Positions 13,801 through 57,137 of a stretch of 64,000 nt of DNA are shown piece by piece. The stretch is from Fimbriosthenelais zetlandica (Eukaryota), in NCBI GenBank assembly GCA_977030845.1, contig OZ365118.1, forward strand, positions 3,348,001 to 3,412,000. The letters run 5' to 3'. Within the stretch, counting starts at the first letter, position 1, and each line of letters starts with the position of its first letter. The position numbers and the translations under genes were made by a program. The notes under the pieces are model-generated. The model saw only the letters and a list, made by a program, of their open reading frames with translations. It was not told the DNA's origin and did no database searches.

Positions 13801-16800
13801 GGTATTTCATTAAAGCTCGACTTTCCCAGACTCTCATCCCCCCCCCCCCCCCCCCCACCACCACCACCCATACAGGGGTGAGTGAGCACGGGCATGGCAT
13901 GATGGTTCTCATAGTCCGGACTACTAGTGTATCCGTGTTAATGGGAGATATAGATAGTCATGGTAGTCAGTATTACCATTAATCATGTCTACACAGGCTG
14001 GGTAAGAACAGTCAGAGCTTTACCTTAAACACTGTGGCTTTAAAATTATTTAAATTATTTTGACATTTAACACAAATGGAATGATAGGTCTTAGTTTTTT
14101 TTAGTGACCTAACAAATGTAGTCTCTGGGAAGATTTGTCTTATGAACATTACAAAGTTGAGGAAGATATTCCACACTCTTTTTCCTTCCAGAATTCCCAG
14201 GAATTCCAATTGTCAAGTTCTTGTCTAATTGTTAAGCATTGTCGGGCCTGAGGGAAGTTTAGCATGGGGAGAGATTAAAACACTTATTGCCAGTCTGGAG
14301 GCCGTCTACCAGCACGGGAGTAAACTCCAGCCTGGTCGACAAGCGATGACGGAAGAGCCCAATGTTCACAGAAATAATAATTTTGATTAAAACAGCTTGC
14401 CATGAATAATGCATTCTAGCAAATCGGAATTTCCGAATCTAATCTCTTCCCTGTCTCTTCTCTTGGCTTCCTATCTGAGTCGAGCTAAATATGGCGCAGG
14501 AAAATGAGAGAAGAATGGGTTTGAGTTAAAATCTGGAGTTTAAATTTCGATGGGTAATATTTTCGTGTGGAGGGCAGGGAGGAGGGAGTGAGTGAGGGAG
14601 TGAGGAATGTGGGACCGTAGACAATGGGACGGAGATGGATTGGGGTAAGGTAGGAGTACTTAAACCACCAGACCTGTCCCGGGCAGGAAATCCCTAATCC
14701 ATTTCACTTCTACACTTAATTCATTTATAGCTAAGCCACCTGAGAGAAAAAATAGAGAGGTGGGTCTGCACATGTGAACTGGTGAATTAATGGGCGATGC
14801 ACGTCTACAATGTGTGCAGTGGTGAGGTACCAGTAGTCCGTTAAAGATGGACTGACACAGGAATGCCATCATACAGATCTAACACAGCATCAGGTCTTAA
14901 TGCCATATGTACACTACTCACGAGTAGTATATGAAAATGGTACTTGTTGAATGGCTACAATACCTGACTGGACCTTAAAAAACAAATCATGCACTCAGTC
15001 TCCACTGGTCAGGTTAAGTTGGTCAGTTTAAGTTACCTGAAATCATATCTTCCAAGTATCAAATATGATCAAAAACTGATTTCCAAACTTCTAAACTTTG
15101 ACTCAGGCATATTTCATACATTCATGAACTTATATTGAGTGAACATCAATGATGAGGAGGCAGTATAAATGAAGACCGGAGCTAATTATCTGGGCGGTCA
15201 ATGCCGTATTTGAGATGGCAGGATTAGTGGAGGGTGTAGCAGGGTGAACGTGCTACATCCCCCATCTCTACAGACATCTCCACGCTATTAATCTGAGTGA
15301 AAACCTGATGGAAGACACGCGTGTTTAATGGAATACAGTAGACAGACATAGAATCCTCACAGCTCTCCCTGATACCGGGGTGTGCCGGGGCTGAGTTAGA
15401 ATAATCATCCCTCCCCCCGCCTGCCACCCACCACCATTTATTTCCTGCTATATTTGCTCATGTCCCCATGCCCAACATGACACCTGGTTTTTGGTTGAGA
15501 GTCGAGGGAAGTGAAATAGACAAATAGTCGCATTGTTCCCTGGAAATGTGAAGTAAACCAATCATCCATATAATATGTGGACTAATTATTACATGGAAAG
15601 ATAATAAAGCTCGTGTGAGTAGTATATAGAATACGGCCTATGACGCATTCATTACATGAGCATATTATGTTATTTCATTCAATCTCAGGAAATGTTTAAT
15701 GAGATTGAAGTAAATGAGACATAGAAGGCTGTGGTGCACCGGAGCCTGGGCTTGAAATGTCAGCCAGTGGCTCAGGGGGGAACTGACTTATTGGGATATA
15801 TATAGTCGCAGGCTTATATAAGTGAGTTGTTAGAAGTACATGGAAAGTTTCCGTATCACATGGCTCCATTTACCCACAAACTATAGGCAGAGACAAGAGA
15901 GAGGGGGGAGATGGAGGGAGAGAGATAGGGGAAGAGAGATGGGGGAGACAGGGGGGGAGAGGGAGAGGGGTAGGGGCTACACTCATGATTAAGACTGCTA
16001 CAAAATAAAGTAATCTTTAATAAGTTATCATTGTTTTCTTATGGTCTCCAAACTGCCCTCATAATGTTCCATTGGGAAGAACATCAGATGAGTAATTTTT
16101 TGGGAGATTTTCCACTGGGGGAGCATCGTTTTGACGCTGGATGAAGTGAAGTGGATGGGATGAATCGATTCATAAAGTCACCAGAGTCATATGACTGTCA
16201 GAGGAGGGAGACATAGCTTTAGTGTCTCTGGACGGTCAGCTATCGGAGGTAGCAGGTCTGGTGAGGGGGGATGTAGGGTGGGTTTGGGGCTGACCACTAT
16301 AAGGTCCTACTGATAAACTACTAACACATGGCGTGTCTAGGGAACTCTGAGCCTGGTCGGAGGAACTAGAAGAGAACCAGGCGTGGATGGAATTTACTGC
16401 CGACATCAGCTACTGCAAATATCCATCATTTAACTGAGAATCTCCACAAACATCCAAAGTACTTAACGAGGATGCTTAAAGGGCCTCACTGGTCTCTCTA
16501 AAAGCCATCACAAACTAAAGGGCTGTTGGTATTTGGTTACTTTTTAACACCACCATACCTGACTCATTCATTTGTAAAATGAATCCAATCTTTCAAACTC
16601 CGTAAACTAGTTTGAAAAGAATATGCATGAGTGAGAGGGCCAGACAATTCTTCCCTTAACACCTTGCGTCCCTAGGGAGGCTAGCCTTCTTTTCCCCACC
16701 TTGATTGCTTTCGTGCTCAATCCCAGTCGTTATATAGCAATTAGGAGGCTTTTCAGCGGGCGAGGCTGTGCTTGCCAGCTTTACTTTCTTATAGCACCAA

Positions 16801-19800
16801 AGCTCGTGTTTCACTGAGAAATAGAAAGATAATCTAGTCAGTATTGAACACGCAGCCAGGGTGACACTATCGCCACTGACCATGCGAGGGACAGATGGTT
16901 TGGCGTGTGACCTTAATGACCTTAAAAGGGCATGCTTATTGACCTTGCCATCAGATAGGCTTCAGGGACACATGCAAAACTTAACCATTGCCCTTCAGGA
17001 TCCAGTCTGAGATAGGTAAATGCCATGCGTTCATAGCTGCATATTCATCAAGATCAAACCATGGTCAAACTAGCTGGTAAAGTGTCTAAATAGAGAGATG
17101 TTGTGTGGGGAGGGAGAGTTTAAGAGAGTTTGAGTGGGGAGGGAGTTTAATCAGCGGACTGCGGTTGTATCATCAGCGAGCAATAGAAGGAGGTTTTTTT
17201 TAAAGCTGCAATGATGGGGAAAGCTGTGGATGGAAATATAAAAAGACAGGTGGGTGGGAAGCTGAGAATGAGAGCTCTAACTGTAGGCAATAATTATAGA
17301 CGATTAGAGAATAATGAGTGTGTAACAGGCAGGTTTACATAGCGATACTCCCACCTGCCAGCTCCCGATTACCACACACATCTCACCTACTCTTTTAACA
17401 ATGCTTTTCATCCCGCTCTCCCTCTCTTCAGCGGGATATCATAAAACGAGCCAGCCACAAACAGTTTTGTTTTTATGACTCTTTTTTCAGCTTAATACGT
17501 TTTTTTAGATGTGTCCCATCATGAGCAGAGTGACACGGGGTTAACTTGTCTGGGTGTGTTTCTAATAGCAGGTTATTATTGCCTACATGAGAGTGGTTGC
17601 TACCAATTACATACAGTTCAAGGTCCCATATACACAGGAGCAAATGTCATTTAGTGATTAAAAAAACTAACTAAATCCGATGGGATTTTTTAGCTGGACA
17701 GGAGGGGGGGGGGGGTCTTAGACATGAAACCTAAGCAAAAAGGTCAGGGAAATTGTCCTGCAATGGAAATATTGCACATTTTAAGCTTTATGCTTCAATT
17801 CCATGCATGCATGCACATATGATCTTGAGATTGACTGGGCGTAAACCTGCATGATTTTACATTAAGTTTTATTGCTGTAGAAAGCAGTTTGTTAGCTTTT
17901 ATCTAGAATTCAGCAGACTCAATCATGAAGCGTGGATGATTTTCATGACCTTTACAATGACAATAAACAAGGCCTGGTCATAAAGTAGACAAATCACCCG
18001 CTCCCCATTGACACAATGCAGTAACTGGCAAAGTCCAATGTTTTTAAACAAGCCAATGTGGTCTTGTCTATAATAGAAAGGTCCCACTGTGATGTCCTCT
18101 AAGCTCTCTTTATGGAGGAAGAATGGGCAGAGACTGAAGGAAATGGACAAAGATTAGAAGAATAGGAAAAGCTGGAATAAATCACAGACAGGCCAGAAGT
18201 GGTGGGGGTAGCATTAAAGTCATAGATAGCAGGTCCATGCGGACAGTGCCACCTCAATGATGGCTTACCTCCAACTCCACATTCATTTTATGTTGATTTT
18301 TTTATTACAAGAGTCGACATAAACGGTAAGCATGAGAGGAAAAGGGAATTTAGCAAAGTACTGACTTGGTCTCTTTTTATCAAGACCTTTCCTCAATGTC
18401 TTCTTCACATTTTATATCTCCCCTAGACATGACATGAGTCTTTTTCAGAAAGTGAAATATAACTGAATAACAGTAAGACTATTAACTACATGTATATATA
18501 AAAGATTATTATAAAAGGCCATTTCCCAGACAGATAACATCTGAAGTGACTGCACAGAATATAGTATGAATTCCTGTTAGTGTCAAATTACTCAATTTTA
18601 AGTGGATTTATCTCACTTTCTCATGAGACTATCCTCTCTGAAAAGGATACAAATATCATGAATTTCTATATTTTTGATCAGAGACTGTCTGTTCACAGAC
18701 TTATATGGTATTTATATGAGTATAGATTCCTCTCATCACATCTTACACAGCCTGACATGTCATGATTCCGGTCTGGAGTGTTCAATAAGACAATAATTGT
18801 AGAATGTCATCATCAGTGCTTCCCCTGCCTCTACACCCACCCCCTGTCAGACAGCCACAGATATCAATACATGAAACTAACGTTTTTATCCTCAATATTC
18901 TTTTTATCCTCTCTCACCACCGCTCCCTGCCATGTCTGTTTTTATCCAGGATAATATTCACTTCGGTTCATATATACCGAAGTACTCAGTCTTGGATAGT
19001 GATAAAAGAATAATGTAAAAACTGATTTATTTTTTTAATCAGATATATCTGGAGACGCTTGTATTTGTGCCAGGATTAATTTCTACATTGTATCTGGCAC
19101 GTTTCCATTTTTCTCACACTTCACCAGTATCTGTGGGGGCAGGGATGTCATGTCGTTCAATAAGACAATGATGACACGCTATGACTGGTCTATAAGGTGT
19201 GGTAGGCTATATGTAGGCACGTTAATCCACCAGACCTGTCTGGGGAATCAGAGATATGGATTAGTGGCTGGACACGATGATTAATGCCTGAGATAATCCG
19301 TGTAGAGTGGAGGATAATGAGATAAGGCTGAGGATGAGTGATAATCAATAGATAGGTAAAGGTAATCCCCGGTCATCACTCAATATCACGCTCTCTCTGT
19401 CTGGCTCTGCTCAAGCTTTAACTTTACAGTCAAAGCCATTGTTCAAAGTGCCAAGATTCTGAGGGGAAAAACCACAAGGCTTCAACACATTCTTGGCTCA
19501 ACAATTGGTTAGTTAATAGCAAGCCAATATCATAAGAAATATGACAAATATTTGTAAGAAAATGTGTTATAACCTCACTGGCTGAGTTGAATAAGCTCAT
19601 TGTTTTGGCCTTCTACAAAGAAGCCTAATAAGTAAAAACGTCTACATCATATAAGATCATAGATGAATCCATTAAGATGGGAACTATAAGGTAGTGAAAT
19701 AAAAATGAATATTAAGAGAATGGCAGTGAGATGGTGGTGACAATAAGAAGCTGTACATGCAGCTTGTCCTATGTGAAGGTGAAGTTTAGACGGGTACAGT

Positions 19801-40240: not shown

Positions 40241-41596
40241 ATGATCAGAAGGATGGAGGGAGTAGCTCAGATGGGCTCAGGTGAAAAGAGAGTGCTCATC
40301 ATCCCCCCAGTGGTGGAGAGAGACACTGATGCCCTCTTCTCAACCCTAGACGACTCATTCAGAGAACAATTCACCTTCTACACAGTCCGACCCATACCCA
40401 GAAAACCTAACCACATGGTGGACTTTGAACAGCTGACTGAAAAATGTAGAGAAATCATCCGAGATGAGGATATCACCATTTTGTACGCTAATAAACCCCT
40501 AGGGAGTTTATTAGCTGCTTTATTATCCGAGGAATTCCCACATATTAAAGGCCCATGTTCAGAGTCGATATTCTCATGTAATCATAAGTTCTACACTTCA
40601 TCTGTGATTGATTCAAGGATTAAGAAGCTGCCGTATGAAGTGGTTAAGTTAGATGGGGATCTATTTGACACAGCTTATGAGCTGCTCCATAAATGTCCGC
40701 TACCTGGGGTAGTCCGGGCGTGCATCGGCAGTGGCACATCAGTTTATTGTTACCACAATAGAGATCAACTCATCAAGGTGTTATTTCAAACCAAACGTGA
40801 TGTCCTCCACCTGTTGGAGCTCCAGGGCTGGTTGTTAAGTTGTATAGATGGGGATAAATACCCACTGGCGAGAGAACCAGTGTCTCTGATCAACCCCTAC
40901 CTGGACAGGTGTATGGCTGGTGAGGGGTGTAGCTGGTGGAGTATCTCAGTCGAGGCGTGTGTGTATCAGAGAGATGTCATACCCTGGGGTATATGTAATG
41001 TGGTGACATTACCATACGGTAAACGAGATGTCACACATGGTTTCTCAGGTTTTGAAATGCCCACTTCCCTCCCCGCAGATCTCCAGGAAACCACCTGGGA
41101 TGAATTCAGCAAAGATATCCATCGATTAATCGGGATTGGGTTTGATAATTCATTCGTCCATGCTGAGTATATGGTGTTTGAGAATGGCTATGTCCATTTA
41201 GTTTCAATTAATGGTCGGTTGAAAGCTAAGTGCACGAGTATGTATGTGAGGGCTATGGATAATGGAGATAATGTCAGAGCAGCTCTTGAAATTGCTCAAG
41301 ATGTTAGGCCTGAGAAGCCAGCACTGAATGGGAACTATGTGCTGACCTACTCCATGGTGGTGTTTGAGGTGGGGAAGGCTGACTCTGTTATAGACTTTGA
41401 CAAGGCTTTAGCTCATCCTGATGTCGACCTGTACTATAGACCAGGCCAGGATATCGTCATAGAGCCGGATAAGGACTTTGCTGTGTTAGGTACAGTCACT
41501 GTGATAAGTGAGGACTTTACTGAGGCTTTTGATAAAATTAAAGCATTAAGGCCTGAGATCCTCAAGGTACCCGCCATGGTGCCGCTTATATGCTGA
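40241..41596 (+). CDS. Intronless ATP-grasp-fold protein with a degenerate catalytic signature, 451 aa
   Basis: Single 1356-nt ORF. Motifs GPCSESIFSCNHKFYT, SVEACVYQRDVIPWGIC, FEMPTSLP and GFDNSFVHAEYMVFENGYVHLVSINGRL match the layout I recall for stand-alone ATP-grasp ligases (..HKYYSR..VEG....GI.D..PS.L..GF.N...EIN.R). Family recognised by eye. Confidence 0.8.
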   Translation: MIRRMEGVAQMGSGEKRVLIIPPVVERDTDALFSTLDDSFREQFTFYTVRPIPRKPNHMVDFEQLTEKCREIIRDEDITILYANKPLGSLLAALLSEEFPHIKGPCSESIFSCNHKFYTSSVIDSRIKKLPYEVVKLDGDLFDTAYELLHKCPLPGVVRACIGSGTSVYCYHNRDQLIKVLFQTKRDVLHLLELQGWLLSCIDGDKYPLAREPVSLINPYLDRCMAGEGCSWWSISVEACVYQRDVIPWGICNVVTLPYGKRDVTHGFSGFEMPTSLPADLQETTWDEFSKDIHRLIGIGFDNSFVHAEYMVFENGYVHLVSINGRLKAKCTSMYVRAMDNGDNVRAALEIAQDVRPEKPALNGNYVLTYSMVVFEVGKADSVIDFDKALAHPDVDLYYRPGQDIVIEPDKDFAVLGTVTVISEDFTEAFDKIKALRPEILKVPAMVPLIC

Positions 41597-42832: not shown

Positions 42833-45800
42833 TCAGTCTTCAAGGAAGAAGTAGTTCCCAGATTTCTTCTGTTCTACGTCCTGAAAAACAAAGCAATATT
42901 GTTAAAATTTATATATGTGCATAGAAATATCAAAGCAATTAATAGTGTTTCTAAACTATGTGTATGTGAAAGACAAACCAATATACAAATACAATTTAAT
43001 TCAAGGTTTCTCAATTCGAAAAGAGTAATACATTTGAATAAGTACAAACCTTGACTGAGTTTCGTTTGTTGATCCGTGGTCGCAGGTTGTTTGGATCCCT
43101 CCTTATCGTAATCTCCATGGACTTTAAGAATTTGTTCATGCCGTGAAGCAGGTTAACAGGACTGGAAAAAAATAGACAAGATTTGGTCAAGAGATCTTTG
43201 CAATGGTACAACATAAAGCTAACTAAAAGTCTCATATAACAAAATGGAAATTTTTTTTAAATAAAGATTATTTAGTTCTCATAAGGGAAGTGACTGAAGC
43301 TCACCTATTAGCGGTAGCATGAAGTGACGGTGAACCTTCAAACACTATGACTTTATCAGCCAGGTAGGTGGCCATGATGAAGTCGTGCTCCACGACGAAG
43401 GCGGTCTTCTTGGCGTGTAGGATGAAGCGTTTGATGACCTTGGCGGCGTGGAGACGCTGCTCAGAGTCGAGGTAGGCGGACGGTTCATCTATGAGGTAAA
43501 CATCAGCTGGTTTACCCAGACACAAGGTGATGGCCAGACGCTGTAACTCTCCTCCCGACAGGTTCTGTACCTGTACAACAAAATATAATTATTTTAATTT
43601 TGTTTTACAGTATTAATCCGGCATCCATTTCAAAGTGTTTTTTTTTATTTATTACTAGAAAACCAATAATTTTGTAACAATTGTTTTCTCTTAAATCCAC
43701 AGTTAAAATGCAAATAAACAAACAAAAAAATGAATAAATTTTAACAAATATAGGAGCCCACCTGCTGGTCGTAGAGGGCCTGTAGTTGGAGGGGTTTGAT
43801 GACGTCACTGATGAACTGTGGGTTCATGTAAGCCTCACAGGTCTTAGCGTGAAGTAACTGACATACGGTACACTCAGTCTTAGGGCTCACCTTCTGAGGC
43901 TTGTAACTCACGTTCAGCCTCGGTACCTCACCCGCTGTTAAAAATTAAATTAGAAAATTGAAATATAATCTATTATGTCGAGAAATGCTGAGATCATTTC
44001 ATTAGTAGACTTTTATTCTCTTTTAGATTTCTTATTCTCATTTAGATTATCAAATCATAAAGTGTTGTTATGGTGTTTTAAGTTTTTTTCCACGACAATA
44101 TTTCACATTTATAAAGTTATGAATATAATTATGAACACTTACCGCCCTCGTCGGGCTGTAGGCGGCCCGCCAGCATTCTGATGAAGGTAGTTTTCCCGGT
44201 ACCGTTCTCACCCAACATAACGATGATCTCAGAGTCTGAGAATTCTCCTGATTCAACCTTCAAAGTGAAGTCACCTAAAAATAAATATACAAATACAAAT
44301 ATTATATCTAGTTATCTAGAGGTGCCCAAGTTTTTGATTCTTTAAATTTTATATTAGGGACGAGCGCTAGTCTACGTGCTATTTGGCAATGGTAATTTAA
44401 ACCAAGGTTAAATGTAAGGAAATTTGGGATGTAAAAGGAACCAGAAGTTGAGTAACTGACCTAGTGTTTTGACCATGGTGCTGTAGGTTTGATGGTGTTG
44501 TCGGTGGATCGTTTCGTCCTCAGCTCTCCGTGACACATCAAATGTGAGAGCATGGTCCCGGAACCGCATGTTAGCCGTGGGTATGTATCCATCCAGAAAA
44601 TGATTGATCCCTAGAAATTAAAATTTGATTGATTTAAAATAAATTTTAACAAATAACACTAGAGATTCTAGATAAATTCGAGTAAATTAGCAATAAGTCT
44701 CAATAACAGGCATGAAAAAGATCAGAAATTTTATATTGAATTCTTAAGTATTATAACGTACCTTCTCTGACGCCGGCGGGTTTGGTGACGATGCCGTATA
44801 CGCCTGGCATGCCGTAGAGACAGGAGATGAAGTCAGACAGGTAGTCTAGTATAGCCAGGTCATGTTCTACTATAACCACATACCTCTCATCATCCAACAA
44901 ACTCCTGATAGCCAGAGCCGCCTTCAACCGCTGCTTCACATCCAGGTACGACGACGGCTCGTCAAACATGTAGCTGAATAACAAACAGTTCATCTTTATT
45001 TTACTTTTATTTAACTAACAAGAGAAACCTTTTATTTTTAATCACAAAACAAGGTAAAAGTACAGAGCAATTTAACAGACCCACATCTTATGATTATTTT
45101 TCTTCCTTTTAATATAAAACAATTTATGTTTAAATCACAATATACTGAAGAATACTTTCCTCTGTAATTAAACAAGACAAATCTTTAAGTTTCAAACTAC
45201 GAATAAGTAAAATGTGGCATATTAATTTTTCACAATTTGAGCTTCAATACTTACATGTCAGCTTGTTGGATACACACCATAGCGATGGCGAACCTCTGTA
45301 ACTCTCCGCCTGACAGATCCTCCACCTTGTGATCCAACAGATGCTGCAGGTCTGAAAGTCAAATATAATAATAGATTTACATGGATTTGCCACATGGCAA
45401 AGCATTTGGTTTAGTATATGTTTGATATCCTGAGACTTACCTAGCATTTCACAAACTTCACGGAGGTTTCCACGCTCATTCTTTCTTTGTAAATGATCTC
45501 CTAATCGTCCCTGAAACAATACAAAGGTTATCATTTTAAGAAAACAGCTTAATAGAAATTTAACCATAAAAATAATAAAAGGAATATGCAATTGATGAGA
45601 GACAGCCTACCTGTACAGCGCGGGGGATCTGGTCCACATATTGAGGTTTGATCAGAGCTTTAAAGTTACCCATCGCCACCTTAGCGAAATAATTCTGTAA
45701 TCCCGACCCCCGGAAACTGGCCAGGATCTCCTTCCATTCTGGAGGCTCCTGTAATAAAGATATAATAGATTTCAAAATTTGATACATTTTATTTTCAATT

Positions 45801-46784
45801 CTTTTTAAATTCAGAAAATATACTTGATACAATATACATTTCATTGTATAATTTCCGGAAATTGGAAATTATTGACAGTAAATTATTTCTTAAGTTAAGT
45901 TGTTCTGAAAAAGATCTAAAGAAAATCAAAACTTACATTGAAATTTCCGAGGTTTTGTTTCAATTTTCCAGCTAAAACTTTCAAAGCTGTGCTTTTCCCG
46001 ATGCCATTGGTTCCTACAAGACCAAGTACACTCCCAGTCCTCGGTATAGGCAGTCTGAAAACAGAAGGGAACGTTATAAAAAAGTCTTCAATATGCAAAC
46101 AAACTGATTACATTTTTGTTTAATATTAATTTCCACCTACCTGTGTAATCTGAAGGAGTTAGGGCCGTATCTGTGTGTAATATCCTCATCTATCTCTCTA
46201 GGTAAGTTTATAATACTGATGGCCTTGAAGGGACATTCCTGGAAAAAAATGTACCACATGTTAAGTTTCCTTTAGCTAAAGAAATAATGCATGACTTTTG
46301 TTAGCGATGAATCTTAATAAATCCATAGAGATAAATCACTCTATATCTATGATAAATCTCAGGAAGATGGTATAAGAATAGATAGACGTACCCGGGAACA
46401 AATGCCACATCCAATACACAGATCCTCTGATATATAGGCTAGCTTATCACCACGGTTAACCTCAATACAGATCTTACCTGAAGTTAAAAATAGAATATAA
46501 CAATCATACATAGCAGTCAGAGAACAATATGGTCAGTGGATACTGCCTAGAATAACACCACTCTGTTATACTAGGTACAAGGTTTGGTTCCTCATTATGG
46601 CACTAGGTGTCGCCACAGTTACAGCTGAATCAAAGTTATTAAATCAGTTTTAGCAGAAGAATAAGTTAATGTACTCACCCATGCGAACCACCGGGCATGA
46701 TTTCTTGCACTCAAATGCACATTTGTTAGGTTTACATTTGTCAGAGTTGACAATAGCAATTCTTAATGGCTTATTCTGAGACAT
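42833..46784 (-). CDS. ABCE1: ABCE1/RLI1 divergent paralogue (copy A), 14 coding exons, 601 aa, intact
   Basis: Exons: 46784-46679, 46477-46392, 46238-46141, 46054-45937, 45748-45611, 45510-45441, 45351-45255, 44973-44762, 44610-44461, 44274-44143, 43934-43762, 43570-43305, 43161-43050, 42880-42833 (1806 nt). All FeS cysteines, [17 protein letters not shown] x2, [20 protein letters not shown] x2, GENGTGKTT and GNYFFLED* are present. No stops or frameshifts. Confidence 0.93.
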
Positions 46785-48924: not shown

Positions 48925-53083
<4,159 letters not shown>

Positions 53084-55052: not shown

Positions 55053-57137
55053 ATGCCTCGTCAGCGACCAGTCATCAGTCAGGCAGCTGAGAACATCGCT
55101 GACCTGTTAAGCTGCCCTGTCTGTATGGAAACATTCGATGAGAGAGAACACCAGCCTAAACTCCTCCCCTGTCACCATTCCTTCTGTAAACTCTGCCTCC
55201 TGAGGCTTGTAAAGGGTAATAATAACACCATAGACTGCCCTACATGCCGCCAGCGTATCGCCCTCCCCCCTGACGGTATAGCCGCCCTCCAGACCAACTT
55301 CTACGTGGCTCACATGAGAGATTTAATAGGCGAATCAGGCAAGGTTAAAACTAAAGCCTGTAGAAAACATGGCAACCAGGAACTGAGCCACTTCTGTAAT
55401 ACATGTGAGGTGGCTATATGCCCCGACTGCTGCCTTAAAGATCATAAAGATGAGACTGGTCACAATACACAGCTGATGGGGCTAGCTCTACAGAACCAGT
55501 GTAAATTACTTAAAGTGGAGATCTCTGAGGCTCAGTCGAGTATTGCTGGTAATCAAGTGTTAGAGCAGCAGCTGATAGCTGAGCTGGGGAACCTGCTAGC
55601 AGCTAAAGACAGGGCTGTGAGGGATATTGACAGTACGTTTGATATGTACGTTGAAGCCATCAATGTGAGGAGAAAGCACTTGAAGGATAATGTGAATGAA
55701 ATCTACTGTAGTAAGAGACAGACCATCATGAGTCAGAAAGAGGAGCTGAATAAAGAAGATACCTCACTATCAGCCCTGGTAGAACAGTGTGATGACGCCA
55801 TACATAGCGGTAATATAGGAGACATACTGGCGTATAAAGCTAAAATGGCGGGTAAAAACTCACAGGTGCGACACCGTGGACCGCTACTTGAGACGGGTCA
55901 GAATTATATCCGATTTAATGAGGAAGAAAACAAAGCTCAGGTGATGAATCATATCCCTGAGATAGGATCACTCCAAGTGAAGGGTCCTCTACCGTCAGTC
56001 GTCAAGTTCAACAACTGTCAGAGATTCATCGCTGGTCTCTTCACCAATATGAGTTTATCTATTAAGAGCTGTAAGAATGAAGACCTGGGCAATTACCCGA
56101 TCACTGTAGAGATACAGGATCTGTATGATGATAATATACCATGCCTGGTGAAGCATACAGGTAACGGGCGATACGAGGTCACCTTCCGTCCACAGATCTC
56201 AGGACTTCACAGGGTCAAGGTGAAGTTCCTTGACCACATCATCCATGGAGGGGAGCTGTCTCTTAATGTCCAGAGTAACAACCCAGTGGCTAAGATTGGT
56301 AAGCAGGGGAGTGGACCGGGAGAGACGGAGTACCCACGAGCAGTGGCTGTGGATAGTAAGAACAACTCGTACGTTGTAGATACAGGGAATAACCGAATCC
56401 TCAAGTTTGACAAGTTGAATGTCTTGGTAGATACTATCATGTTATCATCAGAAGGTGATAGTATATCTAGCTGTGGTATCGCTATGGATTATAATAATGA
56501 TACCTTTCTCTGCCCTGAAGTGAGCATTCAAGATGCCGATCTGGCCCAGGCGCATGCCTTACTTATATACGGTATTGATGGTAAAATCTGTAACCGATTA
56601 GTCTTCCAGAACACGCTCCGTAGAGCATTATCTGTAGCCGTTAACAGCATTGGTCACATCATCATTGCTGATTTTGAACTCGATGCTATCTTTATATTTG
56701 ACCGGCGCGGTCGGCTTGTCCGCCGGTTTGGGGAGAGCGGGGCGGGGACGGGACAGTTCAACCACCCGACATTCGTCTGTGTGGACGATGATGATAATAT
56801 CATAGTCTCAGACGGTGATAATCATAGGATCCAGGTGTTTGATCGTAGTGGGAAGTTCCAGTACGAGTTTGGAGGGAGGGGGACGGCCAAGGGGAAGTTT
56901 AACATGCCGTTTGGCGTGGGTGCTGATCAGCATGGGAACATACTAGTGGTGGACGGGGGGAATAAACGGATACAGGTGTTCAAGGCGGGTGAGTTTGTGG
57001 CCTGTATTGAGTCACTAGCTGATAGGTTAAATGCACCGCGAGGTATAGCGGTTACTTCAGATGGGCATTTCTTAGTGGCAGACAGAGATAATCACTGTAT
57101 CAAGAAGTATAGGTATCTCTTATGTACTTCACTCTAA
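55053..57137 (+). CDS. TRIM-NHL E3 ubiquitin ligase (TRIM2/3/71-like: RING, B-box, coiled coil, filamin, six NHL repeats), intronless CDS, 694 aa
   Basis: RING CPVC..LPCHHSFCKLC..CPTC; B-box CRKH..FCNTCEVAICPDC..DH; filamin HTGNGRYEVTFRPQISGLHRVKV; NHL repeats such as FNHPTFVCVDDDDNIIVSDGDNHRIQVF. The acceptor TTGTAG lies 3 nt before the ATG. Confidence 0.95.
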   Translation: MPRQRPVISQAAENIADLLSCPVCMETFDEREHQPKLLPCHHSFCKLCLLRLVKGNNNTIDCPTCRQRIALPPDGIAALQTNFYVAHMRDLIGESGKVKTKACRKHGNQELSHFCNTCEVAICPDCCLKDHKDETGHNTQLMGLALQNQCKLLKVEISEAQSSIAGNQVLEQQLIAELGNLLAAKDRAVRDIDSTFDMYVEAINVRRKHLKDNVNEIYCSKRQTIMSQKEELNKEDTSLSALVEQCDDAIHSGNIGDILAYKAKMAGKNSQVRHRGPLLETGQNYIRFNEEENKAQVMNHIPEIGSLQVKGPLPSVVKFNNCQRFIAGLFTNMSLSIKSCKNEDLGNYPITVEIQDLYDDNIPCLVKHTGNGRYEVTFRPQISGLHRVKVKFLDHIIHGGELSLNVQSNNPVAKIGKQGSGPGETEYPRAVAVDSKNNSYVVDTGNNRILKFDKLNVLVDTIMLSSEGDSISSCGIAMDYNNDTFLCPEVSIQDADLAQAHALLIYGIDGKICNRLVFQNTLRRALSVAVNSIGHIIIADFELDAIFIFDRRGRLVRRFGESGAGTGQFNHPTFVCVDDDDNIIVSDGDNHRIQVFDRSGKFQYEFGGRGTAKGKFNMPFGVGADQHGNILVVDGGNKRIQVFKAGEFVACIESLADRLNAPRGIAVTSDGHFLVADRDNHCIKKYRYLLCTSL

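What the first reader, a model, noticed from the sequence alone, without database searches (positions are those of the whole stretch)
42833..46784. An intact, divergent second ABCE1 in an animal
Established: ABCE1 (ribosome recycling factor, RNase L inhibitor) is essential and usually single-copy in animals; multiple copies are known mainly from plants. Seen: copy A has a complete 601-aa ORF, canonical splice sites, and all FeS cysteines and NBD motifs. It alters normally invariant surface residues: KCRQEC->[21 protein letters not shown]->[15 protein letters not shown] (HLH), MPFSVREG->[14 protein letters not shown]->ANMRFR, the hinge-adjacent linker, and TFRRD->TIRRD. Inference: a neo- or sub-functionalised factor for a specialised ribosome pool (germline, dormancy, stress) or an antiviral decoy.
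Basis: partly seen in the sequence, partly recalled or inferred. Interest (0 to 1): 0.75.

Follow-up and report, generated by a model that had tools for sequence, protein, structure and literature searches.

The report
Divergent second ABCE1 gene, kept intact
This invertebrate genome has two side-by-side genes for the ribosome-splitting ATPase ABCE1: a standard one and an intact, fast-evolving second copy that selection has clearly preserved, though no RNA data were available to show when or where it is used.

Summary
Copy A (42833-46784, minus strand) has 14 exons, all GT-AG, and encodes 601 aa. All eight Fe-S cysteines, both sets of ABC motifs and the hinge-2 arginine motif are present. A canonical copy B (48925-53062, 12 exons, 600 aa) lies 2.1 kb upstream. 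These are the only two ABCE genes in the 447-Mb assembly.

A and B are 74% identical overall, and 67% outside three gene-conversion tracts. Two tracts run into introns. Outside the tracts dN is 0.22 and silent sites are saturated. A's protein branch is at least 5-10 times longer than B's. A neutral simulation to the same protein divergence kept the frame open in 0.04% of runs. A is therefore a selected gene, not a pseudogene in waiting.

A keeps two ancestral introns that B has lost. A syntenic relative has a single ABCE1 between the same flanking genes, and no A-like sequence was found elsewhere. A nests among invertebrate ABCE1s, but the date of the duplication is unresolved.

A's changes are spread across all domains. 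They include published 40S-contact positions (HLH loop Glu, the FeS h44 face, hinge 1). Hinge 2 is nearly untouched. Expression could not be tested. Second ABCE genes are already reported in catfish, cod and mosquitoes. The scan's first stage had also noted the conversion tracts on this same stretch.

The parts
42833..46784 (-). ABCE1 copy A, the divergent paralogue: 14 coding exons, 601 aa. Exons: 46784-46679, 46477-46392, 46238-46141, 46054-45937, 45748-45611, 45510-45441, 45351-45255, 44973-44762, 44610-44461, 44274-44143, 43934-43762, 43570-43305, 43161-43050, 42880-42833.
   Evidence: Model built and translated; all introns are GT-AG. Pfam hits on the exon pieces. The HLH exon aligns to human ABCE1 residues 136-180 in PDB entries.
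48925..53062 (-). ABCE1 copy B, the canonical paralogue: 12 coding exons, 600 aa. Exons: 53062-52957, 52677-52494, 52301-52184, 52000-51793, 51672-51576, 51362-51151, 50955-50806, 50649-50518, 50280-50111, 49772-49507, 49259-49148, 48972-48925. It lacks the two introns that split A's exons 2/3 and 5/6.
   Evidence: B is about 84% identical to vertebrate ABCE1, against about 70% for A. It is 92% identical to the syntenic relative L016 outside the tracts.
44899..44970 (-). Gene-conversion tract 1 in A (NBD1 Walker B and D-loop, start of exon 8). The partner in B is 51288-51359.
   Evidence: 72 nt with 2 mismatches, against about 34% mismatch elsewhere.
44105..44236 (-). Gene-conversion tract 2 in A (NBD2 Walker A, 3' part of exon 10, plus about 38 nt of the following intron). 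The partner in B is 50480-50611.
   Evidence: A 75-nt perfect run in the exon, with near-identity continuing into the intron.
43356..43589 (-). Gene-conversion tract 3 in A (about 19 nt of intron 11, then the NBD2 signature, Walker B and H-loop in exon 12). The partner in B is 49558-49791. It spans the site of an intron that relatives have and that both A and B lack.
   Evidence: 215 coding nt with 2 mismatches, including a 155-nt perfect run; dS 0.05. The exon-12 intron is present in L008, L010 and L016.
55053..57137 (+). Intronless TRIM-NHL gene, head-to-head with copy B. Used as a synteny anchor.
   Evidence: Orthologues at 95%, 78% and 73% identity. Adjacent to the single ABCE1 in relative L014/L016.
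40241..41596 (+). Intronless 451-aa ATP-grasp-like gene, tail-to-tail with copy A. Used as a synteny anchor.
   Evidence: A 70%-identical orthologue lies tail-to-tail with the single ABCE1 in L016.

Best explanation
Copy A is a real, old tandem duplicate of the ribosome-recycling ATPase ABCE1 that has stayed a working protein-coding gene. It keeps what the ABCE engine needs: two 4Fe-4S sites, two complete ATP sites, and the hinge-2 arginine motif that anchors ABCE1 to the small ribosomal subunit. It has evolved at least 5-10 times faster than its canonical neighbour B, yet still under purifying selection (roughly dN/dS 0.1-0.2). Three stretches of its ATPase core have recently been overwritten by, or exchanged with, copy B through gene conversion.

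The most likely mechanism, which is inferred and not shown, is that A still binds ribosomes or 40S subunits as an Fe-S twin ATPase. Its secondary contacts would be re-tuned or weakened: the HLH loop and helix, the FeS-domain face that meets h44 after splitting, the NBD1 loop facing the h5-h15 junction, and hinge 1. That would make it a sub- or neo-functionalised recycling or anti-association factor. Its weaker codon bias hints at lower or restricted expression compared with the housekeeping copy B.
For: - Gene integrity: 601-aa frame, 13 GT-AG introns, all catalytic and cluster ligands present.
- Copy number: only two ABCE genes in the genome, both in this window. The third PF04068 hit is TSR3.
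- Selection: outside the tracts dN(A-B) is 0.22 while 4-fold sites are 35% identical (25% expected at saturation), giving a pairwise dN/dS of about 0.1 or less. dN(B-L016) is 0.05 against dN(A-L016) of 0.21, which puts about 0.19-0.21 on A's branch and 0.03-0.04 on B's.
- Neutral control: evolving the sequence neutrally to the observed 33% protein divergence gave a mean of 7.3 stop codons, with P(no stop) = 0.0004.
- Conversion is at the DNA level: the tracts have dS 0.05-0.3 and two of them extend into introns.
- Ancestral structure: A's exon lengths equal those of relatives L008 and L016. Its exon 11 is one codon longer, and it lacks their exon-12 intron. B has lost two introns.
- Contact sites hit: human-numbering E151G, R23A and K20N, M302K, and I312H, E321A and L323M correspond to archaeal and yeast residues shown to contact h15, h44 and the h5-h15 junction (PMC7196836; alignment). 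The hinge-2 motif RRDPNNxRPRINKxxS is unchanged, and hinge 2 has the fewest changes, 3 of 38 invariant sites.
- Codon bias: ENC 55.5 and GC3 0.56 for A, against 50.4 and 0.64 for B.
Against: - There is no expression evidence at all. No sequencing run was listed for A or for B.
- The substitutions are spread almost evenly over the domains. That fits plain relaxation of constraint as well as it fits directed remodelling.
- dS is saturated, so branch-specific dN/dS values are rough.
- No orthologue of A was found: not at the syntenic site of one relative, not in the 5.8-billion-protein collection, and not in JGI metagenomes. Recent constraint therefore cannot be separated from ancient constraint.
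- Conversion from B could mask decay within about 21% of the CDS.
Confidence: 0.6

Rival explanations
1. A is a redundant back-up or dosage copy. It performs the same recycling job as B under weaker constraint, has no new role, and is partly kept in shape by gene conversion from B.
For: Changes are diffuse and not clustered. The catalytic core and hinge 2 are conserved. Recent conversion tracts cover the ATP-site exons. Codon bias is weaker.
Against: Purely redundant copies are rarely kept until silent sites saturate. A has changed about 20% of the sites that are invariant in all sampled canonical animal ABCE1, including published ribosome-contact residues. A review notes that yeast is sensitive to ABCE1 overexpression (PMC11190730), which argues against a simple dosage benefit.
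Confidence: 0.2
2. A has left ribosome recycling. It would use the ABCE fold for another task, such as a regulator, a competitor of B on 40S subunits, or a stress or antiviral factor.
For: Loss of the HLH-loop Glu and of three acidic residues in the HLH helix shifts the HLH net charge from -4 to +1. Two basic residues on the FeS h44 face are lost. Three new cysteines lie around a conserved His in NBD2.
Against: The constant ribosome anchor (hinge 2), yeast-R7- and R148-equivalent arginines, both ATP sites and the Fe-S ligands are all retained. That is what a ribosome-bound ABCE needs. Nothing points to a specific alternative partner.
Confidence: 0.1
3. A is a pseudogene in waiting: an unexpressed duplicate whose frame has survived by chance and by conversion from B.
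For: No expression data exist. A has a long branch and weak codon bias. One syntenic relative lacks it.
Against: The 471 non-converted codons have saturated silent sites but a dN of only 0.22. There is no stop codon or frameshift, and all 26 splice dinucleotides are intact. Neutral simulation gives P = 0.0004 even at the minimum divergence needed.
Confidence: 0.07

Closest known systems
Canonical ABCE1 / Rli1 / Pixie (ribosome recycling factor, RNase L inhibitor)
   Same: The domain order is the same: FeS domain, NBD1 with an HLH insert, hinge 1, NBD2, hinge 2. All eight cluster cysteines, both ATP sites, the hinge-2 arginine motif and the C-terminal GNYFF are present. Intron positions match the neighbouring and related ABCE1 genes.
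   Different: A is about 70% identical to vertebrate ABCE1, where copy B is about 84%. About 63-66 sites fixed in all sampled canonical animal sequences are changed. These include the HLH-loop Glu, the FeS h44-face Arg and Lys, the NBD1 MPFS loop and hinge-1 residues. A has one extra residue after the NBD2 Walker A exon.
Arabidopsis ABCE1/ABCE2 and other plant ABCE paralogue pairs
   Same: A conserved housekeeping copy sits alongside a second copy. Tandem or local duplication is reported for some plants, and partial redundancy is discussed (PMC11190730).
   Different: The Arabidopsis pair shares 81% identity (PMC7839781 abstract). A and B share 67% outside the converted tracts. Here the ATP-site exons are homogenised by gene conversion, a feature I did not see in the passages I read of these papers.
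Second ABCE genes reported in animals (catfish, cod, Anopheles/Aedes/Culex mosquitoes)
   Same: These are animal genomes with two ABCE genes, as listed in reviews (PMC6088178, PMC11190730).
   Different: I could not retrieve those sequences, so their divergence, arrangement and any relation to copy A are unknown. Copy A nests among invertebrate, non-vertebrate ABCE1 sequences and sits in tandem with B, so it is an independent duplication.

Membership tests
ABCE (ABCE1/Rli1) subfamily of ABC ATPases | N-terminal FeS domain with eight cysteines for two 4Fe-4S clusters | tested here: met
   [15 protein letters not shown] and [12 protein letters not shown] are present in A. PF04068 Fer4_RLI scores 44.9 bits (cut-off 23) and PF00037 Fer4 scores 23.5 bits (cut-off 21.1). 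The genome scan also hit A's exon 1 at 48.4 bits.
ABCE (ABCE1/Rli1) subfamily of ABC ATPases | Two nucleotide-binding domains, each with Walker A, Q-loop, LSGGE signature, Walker B and H-loop | tested here: met
   In A: GTNGIGKST and [13 protein letters not shown] and [12 protein letters not shown] twice, [10 protein letters not shown] and [14 protein letters not shown] twice. PF00005 hits on exons 4, 10 and 12.
ABCE (ABCE1/Rli1) subfamily of ABC ATPases | ABCE-specific helix-loop-helix insertion in NBD1 | tested here: met
   Exon 5 aligns without gaps to human ABCE1 136-180 and yeast Rli1 136-180 in PDB chains (E 4e-15). R148 is kept. E151G and T157A/I159V/L160A/E161M/D162G/D163N/L164F are substitutions within the insertion.
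ABCE (ABCE1/Rli1) subfamily of ABC ATPases | Bipartite hinge with the conserved ribosome-anchoring arginines and serine, and aromatic C-terminal residues | tested here: met
   A has [16 protein letters not shown] and GNYFFLED. The spacing matches S. solfataricus R565/R566/R572/R574/K577/S580 as described in PMC7196836. The mapping is by motif spacing and is my inference. Only 3 of 38 invariant hinge-2 sites are changed.
ABCE (ABCE1/Rli1) subfamily of ABC ATPases | ATP-dependent splitting of 80S ribosomes with eRF1 or Pelota, and binding to 40S | not testable with these tools
   This needs biochemistry or genetics. No RNA or protein data were reachable for this genome.

The most novel reading that the evidence does not exclude
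Copy A is a long-lived specialised ABCE. Its ribosome-sensing surfaces (HLH, FeS h44 face, hinge 1) have been re-tuned for a different ribosome state, partner or cell type. Its ATP engine is kept matched to the housekeeping copy by recurrent gene conversion. It would then be a natural separation-of-function variant of one of the most conserved eukaryotic proteins.
Probability: 0.3. Interest if true: 0.65.

Novelty: new member of a known kind. Interest (0 to 1): 0.42.

Why it matters
ABCE1 is essential and among the most conserved proteins of eukaryotes and archaea. It is usually a single-copy gene, so natural variation at its ribosome-contact surfaces is scarce. Copy A has kept the Fe-S sites, both ATP sites and the hinge-2 anchor, yet it has changed about a fifth of the positions fixed in other sampled animals. 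Several of those positions have been shown by mutagenesis and cryo-EM to touch the 40S subunit. That makes A a ready-made test of which contacts are needed for splitting and which for post-splitting or initiation roles.

The locus is also a clear case of a mosaic paralogue pair. The pair is deeply diverged overall, with conversion tracts limited to the ATPase core. One tract spans a shared intron loss. If A proves to be merely a relaxed spare copy, the finding is ordinary gene-family turnover.

Tried and rejected
- **Expression.** The look-up of sequencing runs listed no run for A (kind rna) or for B (kind any) (two earlier tries hit a busy machine). Read laying was therefore never used and expression stays untested.
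- **Full-length searches with A or B.** A spliced protein has no reference and I did not type it in. I tried to build a profile from a full-length anchor plus exon pieces, but MAFFT piled the fragments on top of each other, so I dropped it.
- **Representative library.** Searching with one exon returned mostly fragments and odd gene models.
- **First word-index search.** Seeded from a deer protein, it returned only vertebrates. These served as outgroups only.
- **Search for an A orthologue.** The exon-8 search of 5.8 billion proteins gave nothing above 80% identity and no hit carrying A's derived residues. That search only sees proteins of 39-122 aa, so full-length transcript ORFs would be missed. 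The exon-9 scan of JGI metagenomes gave only an intronless protist- or fungus-like ABCE1 that is equally distant from A and B.
- **A third ABCE gene.** The extra PF04068 hit on contig 1 sits next to a Ribo_biogen_C domain, so it is TSR3.
- **An ancient, pre-metazoan paralogue.** The tree with distant outgroups put A outside all animals, but this is long-branch attraction. Without those outgroups A sits inside the invertebrate clade with 100/100 support.
- **Dating the duplication.** dS and shared derived residues were both uninformative. All silent sites are saturated, and informative sites number 0, 2 and 2 for the three possible groupings. AU tests give p = 0.16 or 0.025 for A+B as exclusive sisters, depending on the outgroup set, and p = 0.35 for A+B+L016.
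- **Own proteins in the collection.** The exact sequences of the neighbouring intronless genes are not in it.
- **Missing DNA.** The closest relative of B by exon sequence (P0289), and P0272, gave no DNA because the sample files are too large.
Full report
**What is there**

On the minus strand, 42833-46784 holds a 14-exon gene. Every intron is GT-AG (86-281 nt) and the product is a 601-aa ABCE protein. A second ABCE gene, copy B, lies 2.1 kb upstream on the same strand at 48925-53062. It has 12 exons and encodes 600 aa. Whole-assembly scans with the Fer4_RLI profile and with an NBD1 exon found only these two genes in the 447-Mb, 79-contig assembly. A third Fer4_RLI hit on contig 1 has no other ABCE similarity and sits next to a Ribo_biogen_C domain, so it is TSR3.

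Copy A has both cysteine clusters and both complete sets of ABC motifs. It also has the HLH insert, the hinge-2 motif [13 protein letters not shown] and the C-terminal GNYFFLED. Pfam recognises its exon pieces, and its HLH exon aligns without gaps to human and yeast ABCE1 residues 136-180 in solved ribosome complexes.

**How the two copies relate**

A and B are 74% identical in protein, but the similarity is a mosaic. There are three near-identical tracts:
- codons 239-263 (NBD1 Walker B and D-loop);
- codons 371-402 (NBD2 Walker A);
- codons 461-532 (NBD2 signature, Walker B and H-loop).

The tracts have dS 0.05-0.3 and include a 155-nt perfect run. Tract 2 continues about 38 nt into the downstream intron, and tract 3 begins about 19 nt inside the upstream intron. 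This is therefore DNA-level gene conversion, not codon-level selection.

In the other 471 codons, protein identity is 67% and dN is 0.22-0.25. Four-fold sites are only 34-35% identical, against about 25% expected at full saturation. B is about 84% identical to vertebrate ABCE1 and A about 70%.

**Relatives**

No sequencing run and no annotated protein of this species was reachable. I therefore pulled ABCE1 loci from unnamed public invertebrate assemblies, starting from exon-sized ORFs. Through the neighbouring intronless TRIM-NHL gene I also found a syntenic relative.

In that relative (L014/L016) the order is TRIM-NHL, one ABCE1, ATP-grasp gene, in the same orientations as in the window. Only one ABCE1, of the B type and with 15 exons, lies between the two anchors. 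The relative is itself distant. Its TRIM-NHL is 78% identical, its ATP-grasp 70%, its ABCE1 92% outside the tracts, and silent sites are saturated.

All relatives have introns at the positions of A's introns 2 and 5. Apart from one extra codon in A's exon 11, the exon lengths of L008 and L016 equal A's. A therefore keeps the ancestral gene structure, and B has lost two introns.

A further intron inside exon 12 is present in L008, L010 and L016 but missing from both A and B. Its site lies inside conversion tract 3. One scenario is that one copy lost the intron and passed the intron-less state to the other by conversion. Loss before the duplication is equally possible. Both are inferences.

**Selection**

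With L016 as a third taxon, dN(A-B) = 0.22, dN(A-L016) = 0.21 and dN(B-L016) = 0.05. This places about 0.19-0.21 on A's branch and 0.03-0.04 on B's. ML protein trees give A a terminal branch 10 to 50 times longer than B's.

Silent sites are saturated, so the pairwise dN/dS of about 0.1 is an upper-bound type of estimate, and A's own branch is probably near 0.1-0.2. I also simulated neutral evolution of the non-converted codons until they reached the observed 33% protein divergence. The mean was 7.3 stop codons, and the frame stayed open in 0.04% of 5000 runs, at only 0.19 substitutions per site. The real silent divergence is far larger.

A has therefore been under purifying selection for most of its history. 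Whether constraint still holds today cannot be shown without an A orthologue or population data.

**Age**

With distant eukaryotic and archaeal outgroups, A falls outside all animal sequences. That is a long-branch artefact. With only animal sequences, A sits inside the invertebrate clade (100/100) in an unresolved group with B, L016, L008, L010 and L012.

Exclusive A+B sisterhood is weakly disfavoured (p-AU 0.16 and 0.025 in the two data sets). A+B+L016 as a clade is not rejected (p = 0.35). Shared derived residues are too few to decide: 0, 2 and 2 for the three groupings.

The duplication is therefore old, since silent sites are saturated, and it is restricted to this invertebrate lineage. 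It either post-dates the split from L016's lineage, or it pre-dates that split and A was later lost there.

No A-like sequence turned up in the exon-level search of the 5.8-billion-protein collection or in JGI metagenomes. The exon-level search cannot see full-length transcript ORFs, and the species' close relatives seem poorly sampled.

The organism is probably a spiralian. The only named hit of the TRIM-NHL gene is from the annelid Owenia, at 44% identity. This is weak evidence.

**Where A has changed**

Of the columns invariant in 13-14 canonical animal sequences, A differs at 63-66, about 20% outside the tracts. The changes are spread over all domains:

| Region | Invariant sites changed in A |
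|---|---|
| FeS domain | 15% |
| Cantilever + NBD1 N-terminal part | 20% |
| HLH | 26% |
| Rest of NBD1 | 23% |
| Hinge 1 + linker | 31% |
| NBD2 | 22% |
| Hinge 2 | 8% (Fisher p = 0.05) |

Most of the changed positions vary in distant ABCE1 sequences. They are fixed in sampled animals rather than universally invariant.

Several changes coincide with residues that the 2.8-A archaeal post-splitting structure and yeast genetics identify as ribosome contacts (PMC7196836):
- The HLH-loop Glu (S. solfataricus E147, yeast and human E151), which contacts h15, is Gly in A. The neighbouring essential Arg (R148) is kept.
- The FeS-domain positions that meet h44 (S. solfataricus K15 and N17) fall on A's K20N and R23A. 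This mapping is by offset and is my inference.
- The NBD1 loop facing the h5-h15 junction (S. solfataricus K296 and S297) corresponds to MPFS>KPAG.
- Hinge 1 carries I312H, E321A and L323M, while the key Asn and Arg are kept.
- The HLH helix loses three acidic residues, shifting net charge from -4 to +1.

By contrast, the constant anchor (the hinge-2 Arg/Lys/Ser motif), the R7-equivalent Arg, both ATP sites and the cluster ligands are intact.

The picture is an ABCE that can still clamp onto the small subunit and cycle ATP, but whose state-sensing contacts are altered or loosened. Weaker codon bias (ENC 55.5 against 50.4; GC3 0.56 against 0.64) hints at lower expression than B.

**Comparison with what is known, and verdict**

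All sequence-level defining features of the ABCE subfamily are met. The activity itself cannot be tested here. Reviews state that most animals have a single ABCE gene but list catfish, cod and mosquitoes as exceptions, while plants often have several (PMC11190730, PMC6088178). A full-text search for ABCE surveys in annelids or molluscs found none.

The finding is a new, unusually divergent member of a known family. It is an independent duplication in an invertebrate, and its ATPase core is kept in step with the housekeeping copy by gene conversion. It is a real and selected gene. Its specialised role is plausible but unproven, and expression is wholly untested.

Noticed in passing
window 48925-53062 (copy B) compared with copy A and loci L008, L010, L012, L007, L013, L016: Copy B has lost the two introns that split exons 2/3 and 5/6 in copy A and in every relative examined. 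The sequence-conservative copy is therefore the structurally derived one. Intron loss through a reverse-transcribed mRNA would suit a gene that is highly expressed in the germline. That is an inference.
   Followed up: partly
window 43356-43589 (A) and 49558-49791 (B); L008:11596-11724, L016:13182-13684: An intron inside exon 12 is present in three relatives but absent from both A and B, and its site lies inside conversion tract 3. The intron-less state may have been copied from one paralogue to the other by gene conversion.
   Followed up: partly
window 43762-43934 (A exon 11): A has gained three cysteines around a conserved histidine in NBD2, reading [14 protein letters not shown] where canonical sequences read [14 protein letters not shown]. 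The pattern is C-x2-C-x3-H-x3-C, so it could be a new metal or disulfide site, or just Arg-to-Cys drift. A also has a His-rich linker (IHRQHHQ).
   Followed up: no
window 40241-41596 and 55053-57137; L016:1-533 and 17802-19145; L015:6382-8472 and 15838-17190: The intronless TRIM-NHL and ATP-grasp-like genes flank ABCE1 in the same order and orientation in relative L016. In relative L015 they lie 7 kb apart with no ABCE1 between them, so the neighbourhood has been rearranged in that lineage.
   Followed up: partly
P0375 (Logan contig of 2916 nt): A TRIM-NHL protein 95% identical to the window's exists in a public run assembly. Data from a very close relative, or a divergent strain, are therefore public. 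That data set would be the best place to look for an orthologue of copy A.
   Followed up: no
L007:9998-10327 (protein P0002): In one unnamed assembly the ABCE1 exon-8 ORF carries an internal tandem repeat of about 30 residues ([31 protein letters not shown] twice). It may be a real micro-duplication or an assembly error.
   Followed up: no
L012:5111-5323: In this relative, exons 3 and 4 of ABCE1 are contiguous, so the intron has been lost. Intron loss has therefore happened independently in ABCE1 of several lineages.
   Followed up: no
G000 contig 1, 8923012-8924255: The only other Fer4_RLI-domain locus in the genome is followed by a Ribo_biogen_C domain. It is the TSR3 gene, not an ABCE gene.
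   Followed up: yes
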